The notes: a model not told the origin generated them from the letters alone. Numbered from the stretch's first letter, positions 13,942-53,834 are shown. The stretch: 64,000 bases of DNA from Octopus bimaculoides (GCF_001194135.2 NC_068983.1:23312261-23376260); one strand, 5' to 3'. Made by a program: numbers and translations.

Positions 13942-13989
<48 letters not shown>

Positions 13990-14051: not shown

Positions 14052-14082
<31 letters not shown>

Positions 14083-29917: not shown

Positions 29918-30238
29918 TTATTTTACGAGGAATTTCCCAAGTAAGAAACTAATTGCAACAATTATTAAGCCAACTATGCAAACAACAATAGGCCAGGTCT
30001 TTTCAGAGTGATTTCCAACACATGTCACTGCGTCAGAAGCAATGCTTTCTTCCTTTTTCTCATCAGGTTCAACAGAATCAACTGAATCAACAGTGCTCTT
30101 TTCCTGTACCTCATCATTTATATTGGTATTCTCTTCTTCCTCTATTTCAGCAGCCTTTGCTGCTGCTCTCATTTTGATCCTTCGAGTTAATACTGTGGTT
30201 AAACTTTCTGATATTGGTGTGTATACTTCTGTTTTTTC
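29918..30238 (-). CDS. Chromodomain-RS-TM gene, terminal exon 4: acidic region plus C-terminal transmembrane helix
   Basis: Acceptor tctttatttttcag|, phase 0. 106 codons ending KTWPIVVCIVGLIIVAISFLLGKFLVK-TAA. Confidence 0.9.
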   Translation of the reverse strand, partial: EKTEVYTPISESLTTVLTRRIKMRAAAKAAEIEEEENTNINDEVQEKSTVDSVDSVEPDEKKEESIASDAVTCVGNHSEKTWPIVVCIVGLIIVAISFLLGKFLVK

Positions 30239-30699
30239 CTGAAAAATAAAGATTAAAAATATACATTTTAAAAACGATTTATTTTCTGTATGATGCAACT
30301 TCCTTAAACGGCTGTTTGAAAAGATATCCAAAACCATTAAAAAAAAACAAAAACAAACAAATAATGAAACTTTAGTTTATAGATTGCCTCAGTCTATAAC
30401 TGGAATGAGCAGGAGCCAAAGGGGAGCCTCTACTTAATTGATCTGCTAGAAATCTTCCTCAAATTGTATTAACATTTTAAATAAAAGACACTGACTAATG
30501 AAATCCCTAATATACACAAAGATGGGATGGAACACTTGCTTGATAAGGGTTATTCTGGGACTAAACTAGGATATGCCACCTTTTTAGATTGCTCAATATG
30601 ACAGCTTTGAATCTGATACAGTATCTTCAAGAAGGAATTGCCTAAAATGTTAACTGATGTGCTATAGCTATTAAATAACATTTCTCTTCTTTATCCTGG

Positions 30700-31175
30700 C
30701 ATAGGCATGGCTGTGTTGTAACAATGTTCATTTTATAATCATGTTATTTTGGTTATCTCTTTGCATAACACCCTGGGCAAGTGTCTTTCTACTGCAACCT
30801 TCAGTTGGCTGATCAATGTATTGTGAGTGAAACTGGGAGAGAAATTTTACAAGAGCCCCACTGTATGGCTAAAAAGCTCACTTTGCAACCATGTAGTTTC
30901 AGGTCCAACCCCTGTGTTGCACCTTGGGCAAATGTCTTCTACTGTGGCCCTAGGTTGACCAAAGCCTTGAGTGGATTTGGTAGATGGCAAATGAATGAGG
31001 TCTGTTGTTTATGTGTACAGAAATGGCTGTGTAATAAGAAGCTTACTTCCCAAGCACATGATTCTGGGTTCAGTCCCACTGTGTGGGACACCTTGGGCAA
31101 ATGCCTCCTACTATAGCCTTGGGCCAACCAAAGCCTTATGAGTGGATTTGGTAGAAGGAAACAGGAAGAAGCCTG

Positions 31176-31236
<61 letters not shown>

Positions 31237-31500
31237 GATAGATAGATACACACACATATATATATACATATATATACATACATGTGTGTATGTATTTGAG
31301 TGTGTTTGTCCCCGCCACCATCGCTTGACAACTGATGTTGGCATGTTTACGTCACTGTAACATAGCAGTTCAGCAAAAGAGACTGATAGAATAAGTACTA
31401 GGCTTATAAAGAATAAGCCCTGGGGTCAATTTGTTCGACTAAAAGATGGTGCTCCAACATGGCCGCAGTCAAATGACTGAAACAAGTAAAAGAAAATAAA
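30700..31500 (+). mobile_element. Tandem SINE copies (old 5' fragment followed by a fuller copy)
   Basis: Two successive matches to the ~410-bp SINE head. Confidence 0.75.
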
Positions 31501-32834
31501 AAGAAAAAATGTGTGCACATTATGTGACAGTTGCGAAGGGGTATCATCGACATAAAAGTGAGGTCATGGTAGGTGGGGGGATACATTACCTTGCTCAGAA
31601 ACAGGTGATGGTTAGTGACAGGCATCCTGTTGTAGAAAATCTGCTTCAACAAATTCTTTCTGAGCCATGCAAGCATAGAAGGAGAGTGGACGTTGAGATG
31701 TATACTTGCTTGCTCTCATCTATTTTCATCGATTGTCAGTAATTATTATCTATCTTTCAAGTAAAGGATCTTTTATTTCACACATCTTCAAAAAGATGCA
31801 ATACCAGCAGATGGTTGAATGGAGAACTGACAACAACACTGCTTATAGCTCATGCTTTTCAGAAGCACAAATGCAAACACACATACAACAGACTTCCTTC
31901 AGTTTCAATCTACAAAATACCCTCACAAGATTTCGTTCAGCTCAGGAACATAATAGCAACACTTGCCCAAGGTGCCATGCAGTAGGATTGAACCTGAAAC
32001 TACATGGATAGAAAGTGAACATCTTAACCACACAACCATACTTCTGTGTGTGAGTATGTGTGTGCACACATACATTTATTTCTTCTTCTTTGCAATGACA
32101 CTATATGTTTAGGTTTCCTGTAAACAATACATCCTAGAACTTGCCGGTTTTGATGTGTGAAGACCAATGGAATAAAAATACCAAATCTGTAAAAAAGGTA
32201 ATGGTTGACAACAGGCTGGGTTGTCTTCTCCTAAATTTCATTTGTTTAAAAATTAATGTTACCCTTATAGATATTTCAACAAAAAGGTTATGGGTGTCAC
32301 ACACACATTTAGTATTCCATTGTCCCTGTAGAGAAGGCCTGTTATTTCACAGGACTCAGTAACTCACTTTATTGTTGGCAGCTCTTACTGAAATGTCTAA
32401 TGCCCATTTCTTACAGCTAACAGCATCTTAACTTATTCAGAAGTAGATTAGTCTCTTCTGCTTAATTTTAGAAAACTGAACCCATGGCACCCTGTTTAAT
32501 ATGAAAATGTTTATGTAATGTTTTCAATAAAAATGTCTCTCCAGCTTACAGACTCAGAAGTTGGATCCTATGTGAATGTTCAAGATGTTTATTTTCCTTC
32601 TGAATGGGATGCTGGTCAGTCACAGTTAACCATCACCAGATACCACTAGCACTAATTTTCAGCTGAGTATTCTAGAGCAACAGGGAATAAAGTATTTTAC
32701 TCAAGGATACAATGTGTCCAGTCTGAGGATTGACCCCCTTGATTTAATGATTATGAGCTCAACTACTTCATCATACACCTTCTCTTATAATAAGAGTTTA
32801 TCACATCAGAACAAAGAAATTTGCCATGACTTAC

Positions 32835-33152
32835 TGTAGTTATCCTGGTTGATGTAAAGGAAGTAACAGGAGTCTGTTCAACGCCTTCATTCGAAAGCTC
32901 TGTGACAACTGATTGGCTGTCAACGACCTCTTCCAGTTGAGTTGTACTGTCTTCCGTAATTTCTTTTGTAACATCTTCACTTGGTGGTATGGTTTCCAAA
33001 TCTTCAGCTGGAGCTACAATTTTTTCTTCAGGCGGAGCTATTATTGGTGTGCTTTCTCGAGACGGTTTCTCTGGGGTGCCTATGTCTCTCTTTACAGGAA
33101 GCTTTGTTCGGGTGCGAGATCGAGAACGGGAACGTGATTTTGAGCGACGTCT
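32835..33152 (-). CDS. Chromodomain-RS-TM gene, exon 3: RS tract plus acidic/Thr-rich linker
   Basis: Acceptor ttttcgttttgctatcag|, donor ACA|gtaagt, 318 nt, phase 0-0. Open frame RRRSKSRSRSRSRTRTK...SFTSTRITT. Confidence 0.9.
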
Positions 33153-34562
33153 CTGATAGCAAAACGAAAAATTAAACATTCTAAATTTACCTTAAAATTC
33201 AAATATTTTAACACTTTAAAAAACTTGGATGAGTCAGAATTTAATCCTTTTGTGATATTTCAAATGGAAAACACAACTGTGTGTTTCAAAGATAAAAAAT
33301 TTATAAGGTTCAGTAGCAGAATAACTTTCTCATTAAACTATGTTTGGAACAAGTAAATAAAAATTTTTCATCTAAACTTATGAGGGTAGATTTTTATTCA
33401 AATATGAACCTTTTAAAAATGGACAGTTTGTATAATCAAATTTGGTACCAAAAGGATTAAACAACATGTAGGCTTGGATATAATTTCATTTTAATAAAAT
33501 GATCTCTACATTGAAACAAAATATGATGTAAAGAGAGATTTTATTCATTCTCACCAATTCCCACAGACTAAGGAAGCTCTAAGCACAAGGTCAAATTACA
33601 CAGCAAATGGAACAGTGTTCAATGTATACAGTCATTTATTCTATTAAACCTAGAAGATGAGATATAGCTGACTGCCATGAGATTTAAACTCATAAGCTAT
33701 AGGAACAAAATTATATATTGTAAAGCATTTAATCCAGCCTCTTGGACTTTTGCCAACTCTAAATGCTACATACTACTAATAATAAATGATGTATAATGAT
33801 GATCCCTGCTCCTTACCCTCTAGCATTTAAACCTCGCTATATCTGACCTGAAGAGTCTACCTGTTTTATGTTCAGACTGGATAGATCAAGCCTCTCACAC
33901 CTCCAAACAATGTTATTCTAAAAATAAATGATCACATCTTTGAAACCTCAAAGCTACAGGATAATTAATGAGTGAATTCAAAATGTGAACAAATAAATAT
34001 CAGATTTGATAGAGTAATCTGAATGCTGAAAGTTAAAGAAGTGGTAGTTTTATGAAGTAGTTTGTTTTGACTGCAATATCTTACTGGTACCTATTAATTC
34101 CAGCAGGATGGAAAGCAGAATTCATCTAAATGGAATTTGAACCAAGGACACTCAACCTAAATATTGTAAGGCATTCAGTTTGATGCCCTACAGATTCTAC
34201 CAACTTTCAATAATTTTTAGGTGTAACATTAACAATGATGAAGGCAGTGAGCTGGCAGAACTTTTAGTATGCCAGATAAAATTGCTTAGCAATATTTCAT
34301 CCATTTGCATGTTCTGAGTTCAAATTTTGTCAATGTATTTAGTTAAGTTGTTTTATATTGTTCAAACTTTGAACAATATAAAACAACCTAACTAAATATA
34401 TGAGCTACTGTGTAAAGCAGAAAAACATGAAATTCTACAAGCAGGCATGTATCTTATGCAAAATCTGTGATGAGCCTAAATATAGGATAAAATCTTTATA
34501 AGAATTTATCAAGTAGTTAGCGTGAAAAACCGCATAAAGGAAAAATTTATTAATTATTCCCG

Positions 34563-34905
34563 TTAAATATATTGATTTATATTAAGAGCATTACTATACA
34601 TAAATGCCTCACGCGAGGAAGGACTCGTAAAGTCAAAACTACCATAATAATATATATATATATATATATATATATCAGTGGCGACCCAGCCACTCGGGCT
34701 GTTCAGGCTTAGCTTGAGTATAAACTTAGTGAAGTGAACATGTATTTGCAAGCTGATTTAATTTCTGCCAACATTAACTTCAAGTATGTAATTTCAGCCA
34801 ATAACTCGGGTTCCTTTGATTGAACCTGGTAGTTTTGACTTTAAGAGTCCCTCCTAGCATGAGGCATTTATGTATAGTAATACCCTTTATATAAATATAT
34901 AAGGT
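34563..34905. mobile_element. MITE with long terminal inverted repeats
   Basis: 34591-34644 and 34827-34880 are a 54-bp inverted pair with few mismatches, extending imperfectly outward. Confidence 0.75.
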
Positions 34906-35487
34906 GGCATTTCACAATTTACAACCGAAAGGCACAAATATAGTTGTGACTAAGGATGCAAATCAGCACCATCAGAAACAAAGAGTCAAAACAACTCTTA
35001 GCAATGGGTAAGCACTTATCTAATGACTGACAAGGGAAACAAGCTCTCAACAGCAAGTGTGAAGGAGCCAGATCCTTGATAATTTTAGATTTGTTTAGTC
35101 CTCATCAGTGACCCTTACCCAGTTGCTGAGGGTTAAAACTTAACATATTCATATATTCATATTTTGAGTTCTATTTTTCCCGTTTGCATCAACATACGTA
35201 TGTATGCAAATACATACATACATACATTACATATAAATAGGGGAAGGGAATGTGTTTATTATTTGTGCTTCCTTGTCTTAACATTGCATGATTGTTGTAA
35301 ATGAATGTTATTCATTTCCAAAATGCTGTGAAACAAGTTTAGTCATACAGAAATATTACTTTGCTTGGAAACAGATAAATGTTGGCAACAGGAAAGGCAT
35401 CAGGCTATAGAAAATCTGGTTCAAACCCTGTCTGATTCATGCAAGCATGGAAAAGTGGACGTTATGATGATGATGATGAACACTTAC

Positions 35488-35646
35488 TCGAGTAGATTTA
35501 TTTCTCTTGTACTCTTCCAGAAGTGGTGTTGCACTTGTAAGATTTGATGCTGGTTCCCATGAGTCTTCTTCTGCACCAAAATTTTTCCATCGAATAAGGT
35601 ATTCTATTTGCCCTCTTTTCTTCCTGTCTTTGAGCACAGCTCCAAT
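35488..35646 (-). CDS. Chromodomain-RS-TM gene, exon 2: chromodomain (IGAVLKDRKKRGQIEYLIRWKNFGAEEDSWEPASNLTSATPLLEEYKRNKSTR)
   Basis: Chromodomain signature EYLIRWKNF...DSWEP..NL. Acceptor tttctgtaattgaag|, donor CGA|gtaagt, 159 nt, phase 0-0. Confidence 0.93.
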
Positions 35647-38439
35647 CTTCAATTACAGAAATAAAAAACTTTTTTAAAAATACAATTTATTTTAAAATGT
35701 TTAAAGCAGTGGTTCTCAAGCAGGGTCCAGATAAGATTTTGTTAAAATTTATCTGTAATAAATTTGTTATACAAAATAATTTGTTATATTCACAAAATAT
35801 TTTAATACAGTTCCTAATAATTAATTATAAAAATATATGTTTATTTTAAACATTGAATAACTAGGAGGGTCCATCTAAGTAAAATATGAATCAAAGGGGA
35901 TTCACAGCCATAAAATGGTTGCGAAACACTGCTTTAAAGGATAAGATTACTAGAAAGGATTTTTTCCTTTTTTAATTGTAAAAATATTGGTCATCAACCA
36001 ATATATTTTCTCTTTTACCAAATATCTGAATACAATTTCACCTAATTAACTATTGGGCTGTACATCTTGACAGAAAAATTAACAGCTTATGGTTGAAATG
36101 GTTTTGTTGATAAATCGCTTAACTTTAGAACATCAGTGTTTGGCAGAGAAAGTCCATGTCAGAAGTTAACAATACAAGAGACTAGGCTAGCTTTGTAAGA
36201 AAATATAAACAATGATATACTATCTTTGTTGGAAAACTAATGTCATGCATTTGGCTTTGGATTCCTCTGTAATGTGGAAATACAGATAATAAATAGTGGT
36301 CAATGATAACTCCTTTTTATTTTTGCTTTCGTTTGAAGGTCATTAAATCCTATCTTGCTAGTATTTCTGTTTAACCCCAGGTCATCTCTAATCCAGCTGA
36401 TCTATGATCACAATATTCCAGTCATGATCATCCAATCTTTTCAATTATAGTGTCAATTACTATCAAATGTATCTTTCCTCATTCTTAAGATAGATTTTTA
36501 TTTCAAGGGACATTTGGCTGCTCTTTTTAGCAGTCAAGTAACCATTAGAGGCTCTTTTGTTGACTTGTCTACTTCTCAATAGTCATTGTTCTTGCTCAAA
36601 CCTAATGCTGGCAAAGCATTGATGGGTGAGGAGAAAGAATACATGCAGCCAGAGATTCAGCTCACATTCTTTCTGGCATTCTAGTTAATGAGTGTGTATG
36701 CTTGTGTGTAGAGACTACATGTGAAACATTAAATATGTATGTTATTCTGTTATTACTATACTCTATATATCTAATAAGTGTTGTTACTACTGTAATTGCA
36801 ACTTGAAACAATCCATTTTACATTTACATACATAAAATAAGAAAATTTAATCAAACAACATTTATTTGTAATAGTACAATATTTTCTGGTATGACTCAGT
36901 GAACAACTTCGATAATTTATACAAGTTTCACATCCAACAAGATTCTTTATTCAATAATATTTTGTGGAAATGCTTAAAACTAAGTCTTCCTTGTGTAATC
37001 TACTACTTATCTATTGACATACCCATTTCACACAAGTGGTAGAAGATAACTTTCAAGTAAACGAGAAAAGCATTTTATCAAATTTAGATATTAATCTAAT
37101 CACTTAACCCTTTAGTATTTAGATTACTCTGTCAAATGTAATATTTATTCATAATGTTTTGAATAAATCATGCATTATCTCATAGCTTCAAGATTTTAAT
37201 GATGAGAGTGTTTATTTTTTTGAATGACACTGTATAGTAGGTGTGAGAGGCTAGATCTGGCCAGTTTGAACTGAAAACAAGTAGAACATTTGGGCCAAAT
37301 ATGGCCAATTTAAATGCTAAAGGGCTAAGCTCACAAACTGAAACCAATAATAATTCCCTATACCCACCACATGAATAATATCAGTGATGTAGTGTAGCTT
37401 TTAGCCAATTAAGATTTTCTATTTTTCTACTACATTCATATCAACTGTTTACAAGTATTAAGCAGTATCTTTTACAACCAGTTGCCACTATTGCAACAGT
37501 TTTTGTTTCTCTAGACTTTTTTGCAATCCTTATTTGCAATCCTTCTGATAAATTCAGCATGCATGATTTTCTTAACAATCTGCTTCCTTTCAATCCTACA
37601 GTGTCATATTCTCCCAACACATCTTGTATTTATCAACATCGTCCAGTGAGTTGAAATTTAAAGTATTACTAAGTTAGTAACACAAGTTGACATTTAATGT
37701 TCAACTTCTGTCACCAAATCTCAAATATTGAGTCTAAGGGAAAGAACTTATTTAAATAGTTATTTAAATAGTCAAATGAAGGCAGTATGTGAAAGAAGTG
37801 TTTAACCTTTTAGAATTCAGATTTTTCAGTCAGATTAATACTTATTTATTCACATTGTTTTAAATTGAATATGCATTATCTAGTGCTTAAATAATAACAC
37901 TGCAATTTTCTCCTACTGTCTGCATTGAGAAACTAAAGAAAATTAATGGTAAATGCCACAAAAAAAAAAAAAAAAAGAGCATCACATACTCTGCTTCTGG
38001 ACTACTCAACAACCAAAATACTTAATTCAGACATCATTTATCACAGAAGGTTGGAATGACTAAGGCATTCATGAACCTGAAGTCCATATCTGTTGAGCAT
38101 GTTTTGGCATAATATCTGCTCAGACAATTCTATAATTAATTAACTAGCTAGCTAGATAATGGGTAATGTACTGAACTGTGAGAGATTAATATCCTAGCTA
38201 AAAGAAAATAGGTTTTTGGCATGTCTCACGACAAATATTGGATTTAAAGGTTTGGCCTCATGACCTGGGTTCTTAATTCAACTCATAAGAGTTGATTTGC
38301 CAGTGTGTGTACAAAAGAATATGAACCTTTTGGGGTTGACACATTGGTTCTGATGTTAAAGAAAATATTTTTACACAGATCTAGTTTTTCAAACCAATTA
38401 AGAATTTTTTTTGTTTGGAAAGCTAGAATTTTGTAGTCT

Positions 38440-39595
38440 TAGTCAGTCAGACCCATCTGGTATCTACATGATGGAAAGCATAATTGTTTTTCAGATGACA
38501 TTAATTTTTGAGAAATTAATGAGAGCTGGAGTTGAAAAAGTTGGAAGAACACAATGGCAGTTGTTGTGTGAATAGAAAAGGTGTAGGTAAAAGTGCAAGT
38601 TGGTATTTTGAGAGTGAACAGAACTGAAAATGTATAGACTGATGATGATAGAAATAGAGAAAATAGGAGATGGTAGAGGTTAACTATCCAAGATGGGTAA
38701 AAGTTGTTCATAAAAGAGATGAAAACAAGGGATTCCTCCTAAGGGAGTGCAGTAGCACTGATAGACTCATTGATAAAATTACCATGGAATTACGGCGAAC
38801 TGGACAAAAATCTGGGCCCTTAATGTGGTTCATGAAAAAGTTACCATCTTTAGTCCTCATCTTAGGATTAATGGTCATCTCTGGTTATTTTTAAAACTCA
38901 GTGGTGAAGGGGAAACAGTTGAGGGTAAAGAGGAATTTAATTAACTGGAGAAGAGTGGTAGCACTGGATTCAAACGAAGGCAGCACATCAAAGTGCTTAA
39001 CCCTTTAATATTCAGATTTCTCTGTCAAATGTAATACTTATTCATTCACACTGTTTTAAATTAATTATGCATTATCTTGTAGCTTCAAGATAATGATGAT
39101 GCGATTGTTTATTTTTTTAGAATGACATTGTAGGGTAGGTGTGAGAAGCCAGATCTGGCTGGTTCGAGCACGAAACAAGAATATTTGGGCTAGATATGGC
39201 CGGGTTAAATGCTAAAAGGGTTAAGGGCTCAGAGCTTGTTGTTGTAGAGTATGACAGTGTAAAGGGATTTTACATCCATGATGAAAAGAAGTCATGAAGA
39301 TTCAGGAAAGAAGGAAATGGAGTCGAGAAGGTTAAGTTCATGGCTGGTATCCTTAATGACAGCAGAACAGTGATTAACGAGTGGCAGGAGTTTATTAAGG
39401 TAGCAGGAGAGAAGTTCAACAAGACTACTACAGGGAAAGATGATGAAGTAACCAGGATAGCTGGGCCCACACACATTTGGAAGAAAATAGATCTTAGAAG
39501 TACAAAGTATGTTGATGAGATTCATAGCTGTAGGAGGAATTTCGGAAGAGATTAGCAAGTTAATAGTTTCGGGATAACATTGAGTAATCTGCAAA
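38440..39595 (-). mobile_element. Degenerate Penelope-like reverse transcriptase, interrupted by a piggyBac-like MITE (38997-39225)
   Basis: KIYFLP..., VIKDTSH, FIMDVKSLYTVI and FMNNFYPS motifs match the order of PLE RT motifs. Confidence 0.75.
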
Positions 39596-43764: not shown

Positions 43765-44140
43765 AGTGGTTAGGGCAGCGGTCTCGCGGTCATAGGATTG
43801 TGGTTTCGATTCCCAGACCGGGCGTTGTGAGTGTTTATTGAGCGAAAACACCTAAAGCTCCACGAGGCTCCGACAGGGGATGGTAGTGAACCCTGCTGTA
43901 CCCTTTCACCACAACTTTCTCTCACTCTTACTTCCTGTTTCTGTTGTGCCTGTAATTCAAAGGGTCAGCCTTGTTACCCTGTGTCACGCTGAATATCCCC
44001 GAGAACTACGTTAAGGGTACACGTGTCTGTGGAGTGCTCAGCCACTTGCACATTAATTTCACGAGCAGGCTGTTCCATTGATCGGATCAACTGGAACCCT
44101 TGACGTCGTAAGCAACGGAGTGCCAACAACAACAACAATT
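43765..44140 (+). mobile_element. tRNA-derived SINE (second family) with a (CAA)n tail
   Basis: A box TGGCCCAGTGG, B box GGTTTCGATTCCC. Older copies near 16245-16500, 20250-20580 and 60830-61120. Confidence 0.85.
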
Positions 44141-46654
44141 AAGAAAATAAAAACATCTAATTTCATTTTGCATATACTGCTCATTGCAAAACCACTAAAA
44201 CAAAACTACATCCAATTCAGTTATTTTGTTCTTTACTTATGCTATTCATATCTTCTTCCCCACTACCCCAAAGTTTGGTTCCTTCTGAACTTTAACCTTT
44301 TCACATCAACTTGTCTGAAACCATCAGTTTTTCTGTGACACAAACTTCCTGTTTTAAAGGGATCTAAATTTAAAATTTCCTTTAAAACTCCATGTCAACC
44401 TATGTTCCAAACAAGGCAGTGAGCTGGCAGAATTATTAGCAGTCTAAACAAAATGCTTAGCAACATTTCATCTATTTTTTTAATGTTCCGAGTTAAAACT
44501 CTGCCAAGGTTGACTTTGCCTTTTATCCTTTCAGGGTCAGTAAAATAAGCAAGCACCAGTGGAGCACTAAGGGGTCGATGTAATCAATTTATGCTCCAAA
44601 CACTAGTTTAATAGCAAACTTATTTTACTAAGTTCTTCATTATTTTAAAAGTTAATTGAAATTAAAGTAGCATAGTTCAACAGAAATATAGTAACAAGAG
44701 TTAAATCTTAGTATGTTTTGATATCAATGCAAGTAGCATAGCAGACATATTCTACTGGGTGGTGCTTAATGTGTGTGTGTGTGTGTGTGCACACACACAT
44801 TACATATACATACATACATACATACATACATACATAGAGAAATAAATTTTATTAGAAAATTCTAATGAGGAAAACGTAAAAAGGTTATACTATTGCTTAA
44901 TGATTTGCGAGTCTCATTCATCAAAAGCATACTTATGTTCAAAAGGCTGAGAATTAATTTTTGAAAGCAATGCATAATACATTACAAATTAACAGTATTA
45001 CTTATCACAAAAGTGTAGAGAGCAAAATGACTGTTGTAAAGAGGTAGGGCAAGATTACTATTTCAAACTCTGGAATCTGAAGCATTCAATACTAGACAGA
45101 AGAAATAAAACATCATCTAAGAAATTATTACATTACGATATAATTACACCATAACAAACAGATGGTAGTTTAGAGCAAACCAAGCGCGCGCGCGCACACA
45201 CACACGTGCACACACGCGCACGCACGTGTACAAGGCCTAGAGTTTGCAGAGAGGGGTACTGGTCAATTACATTGACCTCACATGCTCAAATGGTATTTTA
45301 TTTTATTGATCACTAAAATGATGAAAGGGAAGTCAACCTTAGTGGAACTTGGATTCAGAACACAAAACCAAAAGAAATGCCACCAAGCATTTTGTCCAGC
45401 ATGTAATGATTCTCCCAGTTCACTGCCATATTGAGAGAGAGAATATTGAGTTGTTTATGAATATGCATGATGTTCCATTATAGATATGTACTTTGATGAA
45501 GGGTAAATCTATACAGGGTTCACAGTTGTACAGGACAGAAATATTTGTCTTCCGAGGAGATAAATTCACCATTAGAATTAGTTTCAATTACTAATAATTA
45601 TAGACAAGGATAAGGCGGCAAGCTGGTAAAATTGTTAGCATGCCAAGCAAGATGCTTAGTGGCATTTCATCTGCATTTATATTGAGTTCAAATTCTGCTG
45701 AGGTTCATTTCGCCTTTCAGAGTCAAAATTACCAGTTGAACACTGGGGTGCATGTAATCAACTGGCCCATATCCCCAAAATTGCTGCCTTGTGCCAAAAT
45801 TTGAAACCAATAATTATAGACAAGGATTGTGTGGAGTCAGGTGGCACCAGGAAGTATGCCATTAATGGAGCACATACACAACAACACATTCAAATATATT
45901 TCAGCATATACTAAGGCAATAAAATATAAAGAAAACAGAATAAAGGATCAACTCATCATAATTATTATGTTCATCCCTCTATGTGAGAGAGAGTTGGACA
46001 CAGGGTCGTGCACAACACTTTTAGAGATAGAGTTTTATACGCAGACACTCTTCCTCACACTAATTCTATTAGCTGTGTCTTACAACATGCAGGGATATGG
46101 CGTATTTGATTTAAAAATGGATTGGTGTATATGATTCTCTTTAAATGACGGGCAACAGAATAATAGAAAGGCAAATATGATGAACTAAGGCATGAAGCCA
46201 TCAAGCTTGAATGAATAAAGAACATTTAGTAAGAGCAGAAGATACATAGAGGACAAGGCACACAAAGTGGGTCAGTATGATTGAAATATTACTTAGTTTG
46301 ATTGTGTGTAATGAGAATGAATATATAAATAATATAGATTTCCTTACAAATTCCACAGTCAATATGTGGCGGGTCCCAATAGGAAAAAGAGTCAATGTAA
46401 AATTTCATCTTTAAGACAAAATTGAGAGATAAAGATTTTGCAACTCTCTCATAGTTTGTATAGTTAATAATATATCTTTTTTTTTATAACTGGTGGAAGT
46501 AATGATACAGGTCAAGCAATTATGTACAGCAATTTCATTGGTTCATCAGATTATTACCTATATCTGCAGTTACATGGTGACCAACTCAGTACTTTGCACA
46601 TATGCACAGTAACCAGCACAGCATCACACACAGTAACCAACAAAGTATCATACT

Positions 46655-46808
46655 TCATCATCATCGTTTAACGTCCGCTTTCCATGCTAGCATGGGTTGG
46701 ACGATTTGACTGAGGGCTGGTGGACCAGGAGGCGACACCAGGCTCCAATCTGATTTGGCCGAGTTTCTACAGCTGGATGCCCTTCCTAACGCCAACCACT
46801 CTGAGAGT
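46655..46808 (-). mobile_element. RTE 3' tail
   Basis: Reverse complement of the 10570-10717 tail. Confidence 0.8.
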
Positions 46809-48879
46809 ATGTGAAAGGCCAATAGTAGTAAAATATAAACCCAGTATTACAAAAGATATCAAAATATTTGCACTAATAAAACTAATAAAGCTAATTTACA
46901 ATTGGCTCCAAAAATAAAGTATTCTTATCGATTAAATTATATGGAACACCAAGATATAACATTTCTGAAAAGGAGCCAATAGAACTGTTACATGCTCTCT
47001 TGACCTACTAAAAATACTAATGGAATCTCAAATCAAACACTAATGTCTTAAAAATTGGAGGGAAACGTTTAAATAGAGATATACCTAAAAAAGACTGATT
47101 GGGATCAACCGGAGTCTAACCAACAGTGACTGAGTGTATGAAAACTGATTCAATATTTCCAGCAGGATTCAATAAAAAATATGTAATAAAGAGAGGAGGA
47201 GGTCTTGTTGAAGATCATTCTAAACATGATTTTCTTCAGTTGATTAGTAGCAGTCCTCTATTTTGGTCACAGTCTACTGTCTTTAGTCTACCTTAACCCT
47301 TTCACATTCGGATTATTCTGTCAAATGTAATGCTTATTTATTCACACTGTTTTGAATTAGTCATACATTCTCATAGCTATGAGATTTCAACATTGTGATT
47401 GTTTATGTTTAGAATGACATTGTAGGGTAGGTGTGAGGCCAGGTCTGGCAAGTTTGGCCACTAAAGAGGTAGAATATTTTGGCCGGATATGACTGGTTTA
47501 AATGCTCAAGGGTTATTAAGGAGTATCAATTCAAACCTAATCTTGCCACAATTCTAAAAGCATTTTATTAATTGTTTTGCTTTCATTTTTCTGTTGTGAT
47601 TCACTGCTTTCACTTCAATTAATTTTCAAAATACCAGAATAACTACCATTGTTGAGTTAGTTTTTTGGAATACAAATTAACATCGTCTTTGGATGGAAGG
47701 TTTTACTTTAGATCACTTTAACTCTTTTGATACCAACCTACCTGAGACTGCCTCAAGTTCAGTGGTTCTCAACCATAGTCCATATAAGATTTTGTGAGAG
47801 TCCACACAGTAAAATAATAAATTGAGGATTCACAATAGTATTTAGATGTATGTATTCTTTCTCTAACATTTTACATTGTTCAACCTACACAAGTTAATGT
47901 GTGCAAAACAAAATAGAAATTTTGAAAGAAGTATCTATAAAACTAGTTTTTAAACATTGATTGGCTATGGGGATCCACCAAAATAGAATAGTAATCAAAG
48001 GGGTCCCTAGATGAAAATGGTTAAGAACTCCTACACTAATCAGTCAAGTGACAAACTTCCTGTGATCTAAATTCAAACTTTCAATCAAAATTTCATGCTA
48101 ATTTATGTTCCAAACACCAGCTTAATAATGATTAAGTTATTTTACGAAGTTCTTCATTATTTTAAAAATTAATTGAAACATAGGCTGTGTACTTCAGCAG
48201 AAATATAGTAACAAAAGGATAAAAACATGGAATTTGTATAATACAACTTAGGGTAGTATGAAAAGGATTAAATGATTTTACATATTGAGATCTTGTTCAC
48301 CTGTACTGTTGATTTCATCTGAAGTGAAATCAATTTAGCTTCATTCTTATAAAAATAATAGTCATCAATAACCTTAAATGTATAATTAAGTCATGGAATA
48401 AATAAATGTTGCAGCTTTTTTCCATTATAATTATCAATAAAGGTCTTATGTAATATTTAATGCACGTTTACAACATCATTACTTTCCTAATCGAATGAGG
48501 GAGTTCCTATGTTAGTGAACCTGCTAGAAATAGCAGCCAAATTTCCCTCAAATCCCATCCGATTGTTTTATATGAAAACAGACTGATTATACAGAAGTCT
48601 TCAATGCTCCTAAAACGGTAGGATGGTTATGGTTGGAATGTCTAATTATGTCTGATCAAGGCTAATCTGGGAGCTAAGTAGGCACATCAGATAGGGCACC
48701 TTTTTTAAAATTTCATTTTCACTTCAAGTTACACAATCTTGTTCTTGGTTATTGAAATGGGAAAACAACATAAGGTTGTGGATTTAACTGAATACAGACA
48801 AGAACAAAATAAATAATTTTTTTCTAGCAAACAAAATTTGTCTTTAACAATTTTTGTCACCTAACTTAAAGCTTCTATG

Positions 48880-49680
48880 GCAGAGATTCTCAAATTTTTC
48901 TTCCCAAAAGCCCTTCATTTTGTCAAGTAGTGTTAGAGTACCCCTTGTGAAGAGGGTTTATAAAATGGCTGAATACTATAGAACAGACACATACCATTCA
49001 TTAATAAAGAATAAAAAGTTTTGAATGGTACAACAACTCACTATAATTCAAAAAATGAACTATATACCTGCTGTAATTTAGTTATCTATAGTCCGATGAT
49101 ATTTCGGAATACAATTCCTTCTTCAGATATTCTTAGATGGAGTCTCTGCTTTGATTTCATCTTTCTACAGTCAATAAAAGTATCAATCAAGTATGGGTCA
49201 GAATAATCAACTGTCCTGTCTCCAAATTTCTGGCAATGTATCTTAGGTATGAAACCAATTTCATTTAATTTAATGTTCCGTTGTAAAAGAAATAGATTAG
49301 TTTGGCTCTCAAACAAGTAACTAAATTCTTGACAGTTTTAGAGAAGCGCATACACATGCATTCTCAAATGACAGTCTTGCACGAAATTTGTTTTGGGTTA
49401 TGAACATTGCTCAACAGCCTTGTTCAAGATAAATGAATGAGAAGAGCAAAAGGCTCTCTACACATTTTTATAGTAATGATTACTTCAAAATTCCAGTGGT
49501 TTTACAAACCTTGTATGCCCCTGAAAAATTCTCTTTCAATTACAGAACCTCTATGGGGCTATCAATCTGATAGAGCTGATAAATATCCTGAAAATACATA
49601 CTCTAGTCTAAATATGCATATTGGTAGCCAGCCCATATTGGTAGCCAGCCCAAAGTACTTCTAAACAGATGGGTGGGTCC
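48880..49680 (-). mobile_element. hAT (Charlie-like) transposase C-terminal remnant
   Basis: 49321-49460 translates LLLFSFIYLEQGC*AMFITQNKFRARLSFE, like the hAT dimerisation motif LLPF.TTYLCEQGFS...KNKYR.RL. A TIR-like CAGAGATTCTCAAA lies near 48880. Confidence 0.6.
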
Positions 49681-49958
49681 TAACCGGAAAGCTTTTGATA
49701 ATAGGCTTGTTCTACTAGCGTTGAACCTACAGCTAAACAACAAATCAGTTTTCATCTATGTTTAGAACCCAATGTTTACATATTAAAATCCCTTCAATTA
49801 ATACCATGTACCAGTCTAAGAGACTAAAATAACTATAGACAGATACTACTCTACATACACAATTTTTTTTTTTTTTTCATGCAAAGCTCAACACTGCAGT
49901 CAGTCAGCTTAATGTATTGGACTCAAACCAGACTCAAACTCACAGCACCAATGTAAAC

Positions 49959-50272
49959 CAGAGGTTTTTAATCGGGGTCCACATAAGATTTGAGGAGGGC
50001 ACGCAACAAAATAGTGAATTGGGGAACCATAATAGTATTTTAAGAGCCCCTGAAAAAATTTTGCTTTAGATGTGTGTATTGGCATGTATTGCAAGAAATG
50101 GTTGTTCCTTTCTCAAACACTTTACATAGTTCAACCTACACAAGGCGTGAAAAAATATTTGGAAGAAGTTTCAATAAAACTAGTTCTTAAAACATTGAAT
50201 GGCTATGAGAGTCCACCAGAATAAAATAATAATCAAAGGGGTCCATGGATAAAAAATGGTTGAGAGCCCCTG
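49959..50272. mobile_element. hAT MITE with a perfect 8-bp TSD
   Basis: ATGTAAAC at 49951-49958 and 50273-50280; CAG...CTG ends. Confidence 0.85.
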
Positions 50273-53200
50273 ATGTAAACCCTCATTTCCAGCTATTATC
50301 ATTGCTCCAGTACAATATCATATATCTTACCTACCCATTATGTGGAAAGAAAGAATTTTTTTTTTTACCTTCTGTAAAAAGGCAGTTATAATTCTAAACC
50401 GCTCACATCCACTTAATACCCAAGAGTCTAACACCGCTTCAAGTATTCCCAGCACTAATTAGGTCGCATGTTTCAGATTCTATATAGCAACAGCCGAACA
50501 CATGTGCAACATAGTTGACTTGAGAGAATGGTAATCTACTCACAGTAGAAAGCAGGACTTTCTACAGGATTTAAGAAAATATATATACCGTTAGTATTTT
50601 ATTTAAGGGGTTTAACTTTGATAATGTTTCCATCTCTCTTAGAGAACAAAAAAAAAAAAGAAAGCATTGAGAGAAAAAAAATTCAGACTACATATAAATA
50701 CACTTAGATAATTAATTAATATATATACAGATAACAGAAGATGTGTGGGGGAAGACTATGGACTATTAAGTCTTAAAAAAAAAATAATAACTTGTCCGTA
50801 CATTCAGTTAGCTATCTTGAACAAAGAACAGATAAAAGCATTGGGGGCAATGTTCTATTTACTAGCTATTTCAGCGACAAAAAATATAAAAGATAAAATA
50901 TGCTGGTGTAGTTATTTGCAGTATTTGCCTGTCGGTTTCTAAATTCTATGTCACGACTGACCTCTGTAATTGGTTAACGTTTCCATTCACGCAAAAACGT
51001 CCTGACAAGAATTCTTATAAAAGCAAATATTCATGCATGCTTTTTCCTTTTAAAAAACAAATGAAACCAATAACTAAATTCCATCTAAACATGCATTTTT
51101 TTTTTTTTTTTGCTTCTAGCAAACTGCATCTTCTGCATTAACAGGAATTTTAATACTTTCAGAGAGAGGAAGGTGGCTCTGAGTGGACAGGTCTGAACAG
51201 GGAGGTGCCTTCAGTTAGAAAATGGCAACGAGGGTGGGATACTGTTATAAGAACTAAATTTGACAGTTAATGAATTGCTATCAACAGACGCGAAATCGTA
51301 CGTTAATCGTGCAGGATAAGCATTCGCCGGCATGGATCAACGTTCTGCCAAGTACTAACCTTGGAAATTTACTAAGTGACAATGAATCATGAATAGTAGT
51401 GGCATTGAGAATGGATGCTGATGTTTGTGCACCATGCAAATATCGTTCCGGAAAGTCCATGTATGATAGCTTTAAATTACATGGAGTTTCCCCGATACTT
51501 AAACGCCGATAGGTTTCCGAGAAATTCGAAGATCAACAGGATAATGAATCAAGCATTGGCTTCAGATCAATTTTTAGTCTGTTATGGAGCCAAACGGTTT
51601 GTCTCGCACAGATGACAAAACACAACACAGTATGCTTGTGTCTTGGATTAGATGACAGTCTACTCCGAGATATTACTGTGGATTCTTGTCCTGATAGTCA
51701 TGTCCTTAATTGTGCTCGTCTTGCTAATTTTGCCACTTTGTCGGCAAAGTAAATAAAGATTTCTAAATACGTAAGGTATCAACTGTATTTGTCAAATAGA
51801 TTTTGAAGCCACTATTTACAGTCCTTTAACAAAACCGTTTTTTGTCTGAATTTGGTTTAATATTTATTTAGGCAACCAAGAAACAGCGGCAAGACACATT
51901 ATTATTATTTACATATGTTATACAAGCTGTAAATATGTCAATCATAAACAGGGTGTAATTGTATATTGAAAACGTTTTATAAAAGACAGGAAACTGAAAA
52001 CATGTTTCGCTCCACAAAGCACAGGTACATTAATAAATAACACATGCACTAACTTGTAACTCAACCATCGTGGTAGGACTGAAAGCTGATACGCACAAGA
52101 GATAATAAAACAGAAACTATTTTTAAGGAGCACAAGCCATCGCTTTGTAGAGAATCGAAATACTTCTCCAGTTCATGATTTCCTAAAAGAGCATTAACCG
52201 AATAAATGAAGAGACTTCAATTAGGAATGGCACAAAGAAAAAAATAGTATAAATCTTTATATAATAAATCTAAAATTGGTGTTTCGGGGTTTCTTTAGGA
52301 TCGTTTGGAAGAAAGATCCTTTGCGAATGCCGTTCGCCTAAATTATAAAGTAAACGTATTCTAAAAATTCATTGGAAAGGTCTTTTAATGCAACAATTAT
52401 TCTATACATTATTTCGATGCAATTTATTTTTAGAAAGCATTTAATTTTTTTTTAATTTTTAAACCTATAAGAATTAAATAAAATGATAAAATTTCTTTAG
52501 ATATAGCAACATATTGTAAAGAGTGCAATTAGATGCAGTAGTTAACATAAAAACATCAATGGGAAGGTTTTTTTTCCTATTTACTACTCAATGTCGTCTA
52601 GGGCGCCAAATACGCCGGCACATTTTAAATTAGATGTTAGCACTAAGAATGCATCTTTGGTTTTTCTACTGATTACTAATTCAATCAATTAAATAATGAA
52701 TTGGATACATCTATTCTGTAGCTTTGAATGAATCAATAAGATTCATTAAAACTAATGATTATTCAATTGACAATATATAAGTATATTTCTGTGAAACATT
52801 CTTACATTTTAAGACAATTACTACTACGAACATTATTACTACGGCTAATACCATACTAGAAACTTTCATGCACATTTAGACAGATTCAGATTTATAATGA
52901 TCGAAAATACCGGAAAAAATTGCAAGCAATGCACCAGTTATAATTATAATTTAGGAGCACATTTACGCGTGCTTGATTAATTTTGAAAAAAAATTCAATG
53001 ATATAGAAGAATTAAAAAAATGTATTGCACTTCATTTGTTTTCTTTTTGAAGTGATGTAAACAAAATATGTTCTTATAAAATAGGAGGTGTTACATAGAA
53101 ATAAACAGTAGCATGAGGTTGATTTCATACATTTACATTTCTAGCTTTCGTAAGAATTCGTTTTTAAATGTTAACTTGATTGGAATAACAAAATATATTC

Positions 53201-53807
53201 ATTAAATTAAAAACGGAGTTTCTTGCAAACACTACTCCAGTAAATACCATGTAACGTAGATATTCTAAAAAACAACAAACAATTAGGATATCTAACTAAA
53301 TACCAAATATGGACTATATATTTGAAAGAATTAAGTGGATCAAAAATAATAATAAAATTAAATAATTTAAAGATACCAGAGGAGATGCTTATTTAGAAAA
53401 TATTAGACACGTTTCGGTGGGGGGAAAAATGTAATTTGAAATGAATGCAATTAGGAGAGAATGTAAAGAATGCAGGTTTATTATATAACAAACATTCTGT
53501 TTCCTCTTCCTAAACCGATTAAAATTAAGTATTGTTTGTTTATTTTAAATACAACATTCCTTAACAGTATGAAATAGACAAGAGGCACATGTTTCCATCC
53601 TAAATCGGTGTATCGTTACCGGTGTTGGTGCCTCGTGTAAATCTTTAATTAAACAATGCCGACACGGAATATACATTAAAAAAAAGTCTTACAAGTCGAT
53701 AATTAAAAAATACTGCTAAGAAGAAACCGCTAATGCAAACAGAGCTACGAAAGACTTCCAATAGTCAATTAATAACAACATGCATAGTATGTGTGCAGCT
53801 GACTTAC

Positions 53808-53834
53808 CTCGTATATATCCTCCTCGCTGGACAT
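53808..53834 (-). CDS. Chromodomain-RS-TM gene, coding exon 1 (MSSEEDIYE)
   Basis: ATG in an AAAAATG context, 9 codons, canonical donor GAG|gtaagt, phase 0. Joined to exon 2 it gives the chromodomain start IYE-IGAVLKDR (cf. YEVEKILDKR). Confidence 0.8.

What the first reader, a model, noticed from the sequence alone, without database searches (positions are those of the whole stretch)
29918..53834. Tail-anchored chromodomain protein: candidate heterochromatin-to-nuclear-envelope tether
Seen: four phase-0 exons with GT-AG boundaries assemble into a 274-aa ORF. It has a chromodomain (res ~7-58), a basic/RS tract (KRNKSTRRRRSKSRSRSRSRTRTK), a ~170-aa acidic Thr/Glu-rich linker, then a 17-residue hydrophobic helix (IVVCIVGLIIVAISFLL) and a 6-residue tail. 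The cage residues Y8, W29 and F32 have the same 21/3 spacing as HP1 Y21/W42/F45. Established: HP1 and Polycomb chromodomain proteins are soluble. LBR uses Tudor + RS + TM at the inner nuclear membrane, emerin and LAP2beta are C-terminally anchored INM proteins, and C. elegans CEC-4 is a chromodomain anchor for H3K9me without a classical TM helix. Inference: this protein combines a methyl-lysine reader, an LBR-like RS domain and a membrane anchor in one small polypeptide, so it could tether methylated chromatin directly to the envelope. No chromoshadow or sterol-reductase exons were seen. I have an unverified recollection that chromodomain-bearing LBR-like proteins occur in some marine invertebrates, so this could be a truncated relative of those.
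Basis: partly seen in the sequence, partly recalled or inferred. Interest (0 to 1): 0.88.

Follow-up and report, generated by a model that had tools for sequence, protein, structure and literature searches.

The report
Membrane-anchored chromodomain protein of octopus
This Octopus bimaculoides gene, labelled "heterochromatin protein 1" in RefSeq, encodes a small protein that joins a methyl-histone-reading chromodomain and an LBR-like RS tract to a C-terminal membrane helix; it belongs to an undescribed family found across invertebrate phyla and is a good candidate for a one-protein link between silent chromatin and the nuclear envelope.

Summary
On the minus strand, four phase-0 exons with AG/GTAAGT borders give a 274-aa protein. 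It is identical to RefSeq XP_014785412.1 of Octopus bimaculoides, which is named "heterochromatin protein 1 isoform X1". It has an N-terminal chromodomain of the CDYL/HP1/MPP8 type with an intact aromatic cage, an RS tract, an acidic disordered linker, and a strongly hydrophobic helix six residues from the C-terminus.

Uninterrupted mRNA contigs from decapod cephalopods join the same exons and end just after the helix. Octopus and Argonauta share only these four blocks within the gene. dN/dS is about 0.03 for the chromodomain and 0.10 for the helix.

The same architecture occurs in bivalves, gastropods, a chiton, a brachiopod, a nemertean, a priapulid and hemichordates. These proteins carry assorted misleading names, and I found no paper describing them.

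The likeliest function is direct tethering of H3K9me (or H3K27me) chromatin to the inner nuclear membrane, analogous to CEC-4 and to the N-terminus of LBR. This is inferred, not shown. The idea that it is a truncated LBR is not supported. Alternative first exons remove the first cage tyrosine. Homology to CEC-4 could not be tested.

The parts
53808..53834 (-). Exon 1a coding part (MSSEEDIYE). It encodes an acidic Ser patch and the first cage residue Y8. Its donor is GTAAGT.
   Evidence: The same start is found in decapod transcripts P0004/P0182 and in the O. vulgaris and Argonauta loci. Together with about 160 nt upstream it is conserved with Argonauta.
52054..52068 (-). Alternative first exon 1c, coding part (MVELQ), donor GTTAGT. 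It gives RefSeq isoform X2 (270 aa), which lacks Y8 and the acidic patch.
35488..35646 (-). Exon 2, residues 10-62. It encodes the body of the chromodomain (W29, F32, EDSWEP, C-terminal helix) and the start of the basic tract.
   Evidence: dN/dS against Argonauta is 0.03. The AF2 model of the squid orthologue has pLDDT above 94 here.
32835..33152 (-). Exon 3, residues 63-168. It encodes the RS tract (33152-33102), the Pro/Glu/Thr-rich disordered linker, and the conserved block SVVTELSNEGVEQTPVTSFTS.
   Evidence: The block has dN/dS 0.025 against Argonauta. The region is 96% identical to O. vulgaris.
29918..30238 (-). Exon 4 coding part, residues 169-274 plus TAA. It encodes the conserved helix block EKTEVYTPISESLTTVLTRRIKMRAAAKAAE, an acidic stretch, the transmembrane helix (29995-29939, WPIVVCIVGLIIVAISFLL) and the 6-residue tail.
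   Evidence: The helix is invariant between O. bimaculoides and O. vulgaris. dN/dS against Argonauta is 0.10. The TM helix has pLDDT above 90 in the AF2 model of the orthologue.
29892..29917 (-). Start of the 3'UTR, up to a GTAAGT donor at 29891. This is probably the end of exon 4.
   Evidence: The junction is used in the O. vulgaris gene model P0001. This part is tentative.
27780..28234 (-). Probable fifth, non-coding exon (3'UTR). The acceptor cag|ATGGCAGAC is at 28234 and an AATAAA signal is at 27805. The 3' end is approximate.
   Evidence: The block 28588-27465 is 94% identical to O. vulgaris, against 86-92% in its neighbours. It is not conserved in Argonauta. This part is tentative.

Best explanation
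The gene encodes a small type-II, tail-anchored membrane protein. About 250 residues at the N-terminus face the cytosol or nucleoplasm.

Proposed mechanism (inferred):
1. After translation, the very hydrophobic C-terminal helix is inserted into the ER membrane, most likely by the GET/TRC40 route.
2. The extraluminal part is about 28 kDa, which is small enough to pass the nuclear pore membrane. The basic RS tract may help by acting as an NLS.
3. The protein is then retained at the inner nuclear membrane because its CDYL/HP1-type chromodomain binds methylated H3K9 (possibly also H3K27), and because the unphosphorylated RS tract binds chromatin and self-associates as in LBR. This pins heterochromatin directly to the envelope.
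4. Phosphorylation of the RS tract and of the S/T-P sites in mitosis would release chromatin.
5. Alternative first exons (1a versus 1b/1c) would produce reader-competent and reader-deficient forms.

Shown here: the exon structure, the domain architecture, the intact aromatic cage, the hydrophobic helix, expression as a single mRNA in relatives, purifying selection, and conservation of the family across phyla.

Inferred: membrane insertion, location at the inner nuclear membrane, histone-mark specificity, the tethering function and its regulation.
For: - Gene model: the exons and ORF are verified and the product is identical to a RefSeq model.
- Chromodomain: Pfam E=1e-11. The nearest solved chromodomains are CDYL (2e-11 for the single sequence, 1e-22 for the family profile), CDYL2, HP1alpha, HP1beta and MPP8. 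Polycomb-type domains score much lower. The AF2 chromodomain superposes on MPP8/CBX1/CDYL2-H3K9me3 complexes with target-normalised TM-scores of 0.87-0.94 and rmsd 0.8-1.4 A. W29 is invariant, and the Y8 and F32 positions are aromatic in most of the 18 members.
- Membrane helix: Kyte-Doolittle mean 2.87, Hessa sum -2.1, no N-terminal signal peptide, and a 6-residue tail.
- Expression: all 13 RNA-derived decapod contigs keep the helix and end 6 residues after it.
- Conservation: only the four exons are conserved between Octopus and Argonauta, with dN/dS of 0.03-0.10.
- Distribution: the chromo + RS + S/T-rich linker + C-terminal helix architecture occurs in six bivalve genera, four gastropod genera, a chiton, Lingula, Tubulanus, Priapulus, Ptychodera and Glandiceps. 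A flanking motif D-[YI]-P ... [LI]-[ST]-F-[VL]-[LV]-E-x-[YF] is conserved around the helix.
- Parallels in the literature: in LBR, Tudor (1-60) plus RS (61-89) bind chromatin, and the RS tract oligomerises under control of SRPK1/CDK1 phosphorylation (PMC5617974). CEC-4 shows that a chromodomain protein at the inner nuclear membrane can anchor H3K9me chromatin directly (PMC4783997).
Against: - There is no experimental localisation, topology or binding data for any member.
- Tail-anchored proteins can also reside in the general ER, the outer mitochondrial membrane or peroxisomes.
- Hemichordate members have Cys at the first cage position, and the Elysia and Tubulanus members lack the third aromatic residue. 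Methyl-lysine reading may therefore not be universal in the family.
- Isoforms without the cage tyrosine are annotated or expressed in several species.
- Two non-RefSeq gene models (O. vulgaris, Sepia pharaonis) splice out the helix. A soluble isoform cannot be excluded.
- Many non-cephalopod members have 30-74 residues after the helix, so they are not strictly tail-anchored.
- No transmembrane predictor such as TMHMM or DeepTMHMM was available. The call rests on hydrophobicity scales and on AF2.
Confidence: 0.55

Rival explanations
1. It is a membrane-stored chromatin factor. The protein is parked in the ER or nuclear envelope. It is released as a soluble chromodomain-RS protein either by intramembrane proteolysis (signal peptide peptidase cleaves type-II and tail-anchored helices) or by alternative splicing that removes the helix. 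The membrane would then regulate availability rather than serve as the tethering point.
For: The helix and its flanks are conserved in sequence, including Pro, Gly, Cys and Ser residues, beyond what a generic anchor needs. An 80-nt GT..AG interval inside exon 4 (30028-29949) would delete the helix, and it is used in the O. vulgaris model; a similar one is used in the Sepia pharaonis model.
Against: All 13 RNA-derived decapod contigs and all RefSeq models keep the helix. The two helix-less models use different acceptors and then read into the 3'UTR out of frame, which looks like a prediction artefact. The extra exon they rely on is not conserved in Argonauta. There is no evidence of cleavage.
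Confidence: 0.1
2. It is an ER or other cytoplasmic-membrane protein that does not act on chromatin. The chromodomain would bind a methylated non-histone protein or another ligand (as chromodomains do in cpSRP43), and the RS tract would bind RNA or SR-protein kinases at the ER surface.
For: Tail-anchored proteins reside in the ER by default. Chloroplast SRP43 chromodomains appear among the PDB matches. RS tracts are typical of RNA-processing proteins (weak Pfam RSRP hits).
Against: The chromodomain is closest to the histone H3K9me3/K27me3 readers and has their cage. A reader followed immediately by an RS tract reproduces the chromatin-binding N-terminus of LBR. A strongly basic, NLS-like tract on a small extraluminal domain favours access to the inner nuclear membrane (established knowledge).
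Confidence: 0.12
3. It is a post-mitotic membrane-recruitment factor rather than an interphase tether. It would sit in ER membranes and mainly bring them onto H3K9me-marked chromosomes at mitotic exit, as proposed for LBR.
For: The domain logic is the same as in the best explanation. LBR's RS tract is regulated by mitotic phosphorylation. The linker contains several S/T-P sites, and one TP is invariant in all five sequences of the cephalopod-plus-Haliotis alignment.
Against: This overlaps with the best explanation rather than excluding it. No data separate the two.
Confidence: 0.15
4. It is a truncated or mis-modelled relative of a chromodomain-bearing LBR-like sterol reductase.
Against: Transcripts end after the single helix and run into 3'UTR. 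There is no LBR_tudor or ERG4_ERG24 hit in 18 members. The downstream gene is an ankyrin/ion-channel gene in both Octopus and Argonauta.
Confidence: 0.02

Closest known systems
CEC-4 (Caenorhabditis elegans perinuclear chromodomain protein)
   Same: It is a small protein (270 aa by my recollection, versus 274 aa here) with a single canonical chromodomain. It sits at the inner nuclear membrane independently of lamin and binds H3K9me1/2/3 directly, so it anchors heterochromatin without an HP1 adaptor (PMC4783997; described as 'membrane-associated' in bioRxiv 10.1101/788356). This is the mechanism proposed here.
   Different: In CEC-4 the chromodomain is internal (about residues 82-141, from my own knowledge) rather than N-terminal. 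None of the papers I could read reports an RS tract or a transmembrane helix for it. It is said to have no obvious homologue in mammals. NCBI names the family members cec-1-like, cec-3-like, CDYL or MPP8-like, never cec-4-like. I could not obtain the CEC-4 sequence, so homology outside the chromodomain is untested.
Lamin B receptor (LBR), N-terminal nucleoplasmic region
   Same: A Royal-family methyl-lysine reader at residues 1-60 is followed directly by an RS tract at 61-89, then a spacer, then a membrane anchor in the inner nuclear membrane.
   Different: LBR uses a Tudor domain (H4K20me2), not a chromodomain. It has eight membrane spans that form a sterol C14-reductase, not a single C-terminal helix. 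It also recruits HP1 through a second globular domain. No LBR Pfam domain is found here. The relationship is analogy, not membership.
CDYL/CDYL2 and HP1 (CBX1/3/5), MPP8 chromodomains
   Same: These are the closest chromodomains by sequence and by fold. CDYL scores 82 bits with the family profile, including the N-terminal position, the MAS..E-Y-E-V start and the conserved Cys after NL. All are H3K9me3 readers, and CDYL also reads H3K27me3.
   Different: All are soluble. CDYL carries an enoyl-CoA-hydratase-like domain, HP1 a chromoshadow domain and MPP8 ankyrin repeats. None of these is present here. The RefSeq name 'heterochromatin protein 1' is therefore a misnomer.
Tail-anchored inner-nuclear-membrane proteins (emerin, LAP2beta, otefin)
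   Same: They have a single C-terminal helix, a very short luminal tail and a nucleoplasmic N-terminal domain that contacts chromatin (established knowledge).
   Different: They bind chromatin through a LEM domain and BAF, not by reading a histone mark. There is no LEM domain here.
PRR14
   Same: It tethers H3K9me heterochromatin to the nuclear periphery.
   Different: It is not a membrane protein. It binds HP1 rather than the mark itself and binds lamin A/C.

Membership tests
Chromodomain (Pfam PF00385) proteins | A match to the Chromo profile above the gathering score | tested here: met
   45 bits against a cut-off of 25.1, residues 8-57. All 18 family members match.
Chromodomain methyl-lysine readers (HP1/CDYL/MPP8 type) | A three-residue aromatic cage at the positions of HP1beta Y21/W42/F45 | tested here: met
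   Y8, W29 and F32 align with the cage residues of CDYL and CDYL2. The fold superposes on H3K9me3 complexes. Actual binding was not tested.
HP1 family (the RefSeq name of this gene) | A C-terminal chromoshadow domain (PF01393) | tested here: not met
   No chromoshadow hit in the octopus protein at E<=1 or in any of 18 members.
CDY/CDYL family | A C-terminal enoyl-CoA hydratase-like catalytic domain | tested here: not met
   Pfam finds only Chromo. The C-terminal part is a disordered linker plus one helix.
MPP8 | C-terminal ankyrin repeats | tested here: not met
   No Ank hit in the protein.
Polycomb/CBX2,4,6,7,8 | A Pc-type chromodomain and a C-terminal Pc box (CBX7_C) | tested here: not met
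   Pc-type chromodomains score 43-56 bits against 79-82 for CDYL and HP1alpha. No CBX7_C hit.
Lamin B receptor | An N-terminal Tudor domain | tested here: not met
   The domain is a chromodomain. Three members give only weak Tudor-knot hits, which is a chromo-like fold.
Lamin B receptor | An RS tract directly after the reader domain | tested here: met
   Residues 56-85, net charge +15, with the run RSKSRSRSRSRTR. LBR has its RS tract at 61-89.
Lamin B receptor | A polytopic sterol-reductase membrane domain (ERG4_ERG24) | tested here: not met
   There is a single hydrophobic segment and transcripts end after it.
Tail-anchored membrane proteins | No signal peptide, a single transmembrane helix, and a luminal tail shorter than about 30-40 residues | tested here: met
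   The N-terminus is acidic. There is one segment with KD 2.87 and a tail of 6 residues. The same holds in Argonauta, decapods, Liolophura, Tegillarca, Lingula and Ptychodera. Other molluscs have tails of 30-74 residues. Membrane insertion itself was not tested.
CEC-4-like anchors | Sequence homology to CEC-4 outside the chromodomain | not testable with these tools
   The CEC-4 sequence could not be retrieved. The last homology search, with the priapulid member, returned only itself.
Inner-nuclear-membrane heterochromatin tethers (functional class) | Localisation at the nuclear rim, and loss of peripheral H3K9me chromatin on depletion | not testable with these tools
   This needs experiments.

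The most novel reading that the evidence does not exclude
The chromo-RS-transmembrane family is the ancestral bilaterian single-polypeptide tether between H3K9-methylated chromatin and the inner nuclear membrane. It was retained in slowly evolving marine lineages (molluscs, brachiopods, nemerteans, priapulids, hemichordates). In vertebrates and insects it was lost or replaced by LBR and by HP1-adaptor systems. Nematode CEC-4 may be its divergent descendant. Alternative first exons that add or remove the first cage tyrosine would act as a built-in switch between mark-dependent and mark-independent forms.
Probability: 0.3. Interest if true: 0.85.

Novelty: new variant of a known kind. Interest (0 to 1): 0.72.

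Why it matters
How heterochromatin is attached to the nuclear envelope is only partly understood. Only three H3K9me-based tethers are cited: LBR, PRR14 and CEC-4. CEC-4, the only one that reads the mark itself, is described as having no obvious homologue in mammals.

A conserved protein family that joins an H3K9me-type chromodomain and an LBR-like RS tract to a membrane helix would show that direct reader-anchors are widespread in animals. It would also suggest what the ancestral solution looked like. And it gives simple constructs for testing in heterologous cells: the protein is only 274 aa and has three separable modules.

There is also a practical point. The family's current database names (HP1, CDYL, MPP8-like, cec-1-like, cec-3-like, CBX2-like, testis-specific chromodomain protein Y) are misleading and hide the membrane anchor.

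Tried and rejected
I used orthologues instead.
2. Alternative first exon 1b (..SRLPV.., present in O. sinensis, Argonauta and decapods) was searched for in the window and in 10 kb upstream of the O. vulgaris gene. It was not found. In Argonauta it lies about 21.7 kb upstream of exon 1a, so in octopus it probably falls outside the window.
3. I tried to settle whether CEC-4 has a transmembrane helix or is related to this family.
   - The papers I could read call it INM-associated or membrane-associated, without giving a mechanism.
   - The original Cell paper is not held.
   - The last homology search, with the priapulid member, returned only the query, because low-complexity words filled the candidate list.
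4. The profile search with the word-indexed database was capped at 8000 candidates and added only a few species.
5. I looked for chromodomain proteins with many membrane spans (LBR-like) among all proteins retrieved. There were none.
6. Chromodomain proteins of CEC-4-like length in the hit list turned out to be multi-chromodomain proteins.
7. BLAST of decapod 3'UTRs against the octopus 3' region gave only chance matches. The fifth exon rests on the O. vulgaris model and on a short similarity at the junction.
8. The helix-less O. vulgaris and S. pharaonis models were considered as evidence for a soluble isoform. I judged them probable prediction artefacts.

Full report
**1. What is in the sequence.**

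The feature is a gene on the minus strand. Exon 1 (53834-53808) encodes MSSEEDIYE and ends at a GTAAGT donor. Exon 2 is 35646-35488, exon 3 is 33152-32835, and exon 4 is 30238-29918 and ends in TAA. All acceptors are AG, all donors are GTAAGT, and all introns are phase 0. The CDS is 825 nt and the product 274 aa. A TGA lies in frame two codons before the ATG.

The window is AT-rich (about 34% G+C). It contains assembly gaps and transposon debris, which fits a cephalopod genome.

The assembled protein is identical, residue for residue, to RefSeq XP_014785412.1 / UniProt A0A0L8FZX3, "heterochromatin protein 1 isoform X1" of Octopus bimaculoides.

**2. Domain content.**

- Pfam finds one domain, Chromo (PF00385), at residues 8-57 with E=1e-11. 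No chromoshadow, Tudor, LEM, ankyrin or sterol-reductase domain is found.
- Residues 56-85 are a basic RS tract with a net charge of +15.
- Residues 86-250 are acidic and rich in Thr, Glu and Pro, with a net charge of -23.
- Residues 250-268 (WPIVVCIVGLIIVAISFLL) are the only hydrophobic segment. The best 19-residue Kyte-Doolittle mean is 2.87 and the summed Hessa scale is -2.1 kcal/mol, which predicts membrane insertion.
- Six residues (GKFLVK) follow the helix.
- The N-terminus is acidic, so there is no signal peptide.

This is the signature of a tail-anchored, type-II membrane protein.

An AlphaFold2 model of the squid orthologue, built with an 18-sequence family alignment, shows four things:
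- a confident chromodomain (pLDDT above 94);
- a disordered RS tract and linker;
- a moderately confident helix over the block TVLTRRM/IKMRAAAKA..;
- a confident terminal helix (pLDDT above 90).

**3. The chromodomain is of the histone-reading kind.**

By sequence, the nearest solved domains are as follows:

| Solved chromodomain | E-value |
|---|---|
| CDYL | 2e-11 |
| CDYL2 | 4e-11 |
| HP1alpha | 3e-10 |
| HP1beta | 1e-9 |
| MPP8 | 1.5e-8 |

With a profile of 17 family chromodomains, CDYL reaches 82 bits and HP1alpha 79 bits. Polycomb-type domains stay at 43-56 bits.

The AF2 chromodomain superposes on MPP8, CBX1 and CDYL2 bound to H3K9me3 or H3K27me3 peptides. Target-normalised TM-scores are 0.87-0.94 and rmsd is 0.8-1.4 A.

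Y8, W29 and F32 align with the cage residues. W29 is invariant across the family. The other two positions are aromatic in most members, with exceptions: Cys in hemichordates at the first position, and Ala or Leu at the third in Elysia and Tubulanus.

The acidic serine patch before the cage tyrosine (MSSEED; MASSDSESGSE in other molluscs) resembles the CK2-phosphorylated N-terminal extension of HP1alpha. That comparison rests on my own knowledge and was not tested.

**4. Are the exons really joined, and does the protein really end after the helix?**

- Two orthologues found by homology search (P0003, 300 aa; P0004, 320 aa) are encoded as uninterrupted ORFs on contigs of 1.7 and 1.3 kb assembled from public sequencing runs. 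In octopus the gene spans 24 kb, so these contigs are spliced mRNAs.
- They run straight across all three junctions and stop six residues after the helix. About 570 nt of 3'UTR follows.
- The P0003 cluster contains a Sepia (Acanthosepion) pharaonis protein and 13 further RNA-derived variants. Every one of these keeps the helix.
- The O. vulgaris genomic locus encodes the same 274-aa ORF, with the helix in frame. O. sinensis RefSeq isoform X2 is that protein.
- Between Octopus and Argonauta, the only conserved blocks inside the gene are the four exons.
- dN/dS between Octopus and Argonauta is 0.03 for the chromodomain, 0.03 for two linker blocks and 0.10 for the helix. Synonymous divergence there is 0.9-1.8.
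- Between O. bimaculoides and O. vulgaris, the chromodomain and the helix have no amino-acid change, whereas linker residues 169-249 have 13 replacements and one silent change.

Two non-RefSeq gene models lose the helix: O. vulgaris CAI9719236 and S. pharaonis CAE1308729. Each has a small internal "intron" and then reads the 3'UTR out of frame. The two acceptors differ, and no RNA-derived contig supports either model. I regard them as probable artefacts, but a minor soluble isoform is not excluded.

**5.

(a) Alternative first exons. RefSeq isoform X2 (MVELQ|IGAVL...) uses exon 1c at 52068-52054. O. sinensis X1, Argonauta X1 and many decapod transcripts use another exon, 1b (..P-SRLPV..). In Argonauta it lies about 21.7 kb upstream of exon 1a, and it is not in this window. 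Mercenaria and Magallana also have alternative N-termini. Only exon 1a supplies the acidic patch and the first cage tyrosine. The other forms are therefore predicted to read methyl-lysine poorly. This prediction follows from the known effect of cage mutations.

(b) A GTAAGT donor sits 27 nt after the stop. An acceptor at 28234 opens a block that is 94% identical to O. vulgaris and has an AATAAA signal at 27805. This is probably a non-coding fifth exon. In Haliotis an intron lies directly after the helix, and a last coding exon adds a luminal tail. In Magallana both a short ending (..LEPYIK) and a long one occur. Cephalopods appear to have become short-tailed through a stop codon ahead of that old donor.

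**6. The family.**

A profile of four members was scored against 1.8 billion representative proteins. Besides thousands of ordinary chromodomain proteins, it returned a set of proteins of 180-340 aa with the same layout: an N-terminal chromodomain, an RS tract, a Ser/Thr-rich linker and one strongly hydrophobic segment at or near the C-terminus.

Their sources:

| Group | Species or genera |
|---|---|
| Cephalopods | Octopus, Argonauta, Acanthosepion |
| Bivalves | Magallana gigas/angulata, Solemya, Tegillarca, Mizuhopecten, Ylistrum, Potamilus, Sinanodonta, Mercenaria, Ruditapes |
| Gastropods | Haliotis, Elysia, Babylonia, Nucella |
| Chiton | Liolophura |
| Brachiopod | Lingula |
| Nemertean | Tubulanus |
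| Priapulid | Priapulus |
| Hemichordates | Ptychodera, Glandiceps |

The helix is flanked by a conserved motif, (S)D-[YI]-P before it and [LI]-[ST]-F-[VL]-[LV]-E-x-[YF] after it. The family thus spans lophotrochozoans, an ecdysozoan and deuterostomes, which implies an origin no later than the bilaterian ancestor.

Only the Chromo domain is recognised by Pfam in all 18 members scanned. The other hits are low-complexity noise from the RS tract.

Database names are inconsistent: HP1, CDYL, MPP8-like, cec-1-like, cec-3-like, CBX2-like, testis-specific chromodomain protein Y 2-like, or uncharacterised.

**7. Most likely mechanism.**

Shown: the architecture, its expression, selection on it and its conservation.

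Inferred from established cell biology:
- A very hydrophobic C-terminal helix with a short, mildly basic tail is inserted post-translationally into the ER.
- An extraluminal domain of about 28 kDa is below the size limit for passage along the pore membrane.
- A strongly basic tract can act as an NLS.

Retention at the inner nuclear membrane would then come from two sources. The chromodomain would bind H3K9me2/3 (possibly H3K27me3, as CDYL does). The RS tract would bind chromatin and self-associate as in LBR, where Tudor (1-60) and RS (61-89) act together and phosphorylation by SRPK1 and CDK1 dissolves the interaction at mitosis (PMC5617974).

The octopus protein copies that N-terminal layout almost residue for residue, with a chromodomain in place of the Tudor domain. 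[quoted passage not shown]

I put the tether model at about 0.55. The rivals are a membrane-stored factor released by cleavage or splicing, a non-chromatin role at the ER, a mainly post-mitotic role, and a truncated LBR. They are listed with their evidence in the Rival explanations section.

**8. Comparison with known proteins and novelty.**

The protein works like CEC-4 and like the N-terminus of LBR, but it fails the membership tests for HP1, CDYL, MPP8, Polycomb and LBR. Each of those requires a second domain that is absent here. Membership of a "CEC-4 family" could not be tested, because I could not obtain the CEC-4 sequence.

Seven full-text searches combined chromodomain with transmembrane, tail-anchored, inner nuclear membrane, CEC-4 and C-terminal transmembrane. 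None found a description of a chromodomain protein with a transmembrane anchor. Absence from that library does not prove that nothing has been published.

The gene itself is already in RefSeq. What is new is the recognition of the membrane anchor and of a conserved multi-phylum family. I class it as a new variant of a known kind (histone-mark-reading nuclear-envelope tethers) and score its interest at 0.72.

Noticed in passing
window 52054-52068 (-): Alternative first exon 1c (MVELQ, donor GTTAGT) of the same gene. It corresponds to RefSeq isoform X2 (XP_052822051.1) and removes the acidic patch and the first cage tyrosine.
   Followed up: yes
window 29886-29891 (donor) and 27780-28234 (-): A GTAAGT donor lies 27 nt after the stop codon, and a downstream acceptor opens a well-conserved block with an AATAAA signal at 27805. 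This is probably a 3'UTR intron and a fifth non-coding exon. The O. vulgaris gene model treats this block as coding.
   Followed up: partly
window 29949-30028 (-): An 80-nt GT..AG interval inside exon 4 would delete the transmembrane helix and shift the frame. It is used only in non-RefSeq models of O. vulgaris, and at a different acceptor in Sepia pharaonis. No RNA-derived contig shows it.
   Followed up: partly
L005 18726-20039 (Haliotis rufescens); proteins P0162 and P0159 (Magallana gigas): In other molluscs an intron follows the helix directly, and a last exon adds a 30-74 aa luminal tail with an amphipathic segment. In the oyster, a short ending (..LEPYIK) is seen on hundreds of RNA-derived contigs alongside the long one.
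   Followed up: partly
window 11415-11807 (-): An ankyrin-repeat exon (Ank_2/Ank_4, E about 6e-8). In Argonauta, the gene downstream of the orthologue is an ankyrin + Ion_trans (TRP-like) channel of 1159 aa, so gene order is conserved.
   Followed up: partly
window 13863-15281 (-), 289-675 (+), 16985-17326 (-): Transposon remnants: reverse-transcriptase fragments (RVT_1), a DDE_3 transposase fragment, and a weak Plavaka-like match.
   Followed up: partly
window 7765-8326, 13997-14050, 15776-16046, 54144-54153, 57394-58196, 62320-62329: Runs of N (assembly gaps). None lies in an exon of the gene, although 54144-54153 is only about 300 nt upstream of exon 1a.
   Followed up: yes
window CDS versus L003 (O. 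vulgaris): Synonymous divergence of the CDS is only 0.03, while the introns differ by 7-12%. The acidic linker (residues 169-249) has 13 replacement changes and 1 silent change, whereas the chromodomain and the helix have none. The counts are small and I did not interpret them further.
   Followed up: no
window 6304-6683 (+): A low-complexity stretch encoding acidic (Glu/Asp-rich) sequence gives spurious weak matches to the acidic linker of the orthologues.
   Followed up: no
protein P0094: A 275-aa protein of unknown origin has three chromodomains and a hydrophobic segment 11 residues from its C-terminus. It may be another, unrelated case of a membrane-anchored chromodomain protein.
   Followed up: no
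window 31150-31330 and 59729-60246: Long (AC)n/(TG)n and related microsatellites produce artefactual His-Thr and Cys-Val ORFs.
   Followed up: no
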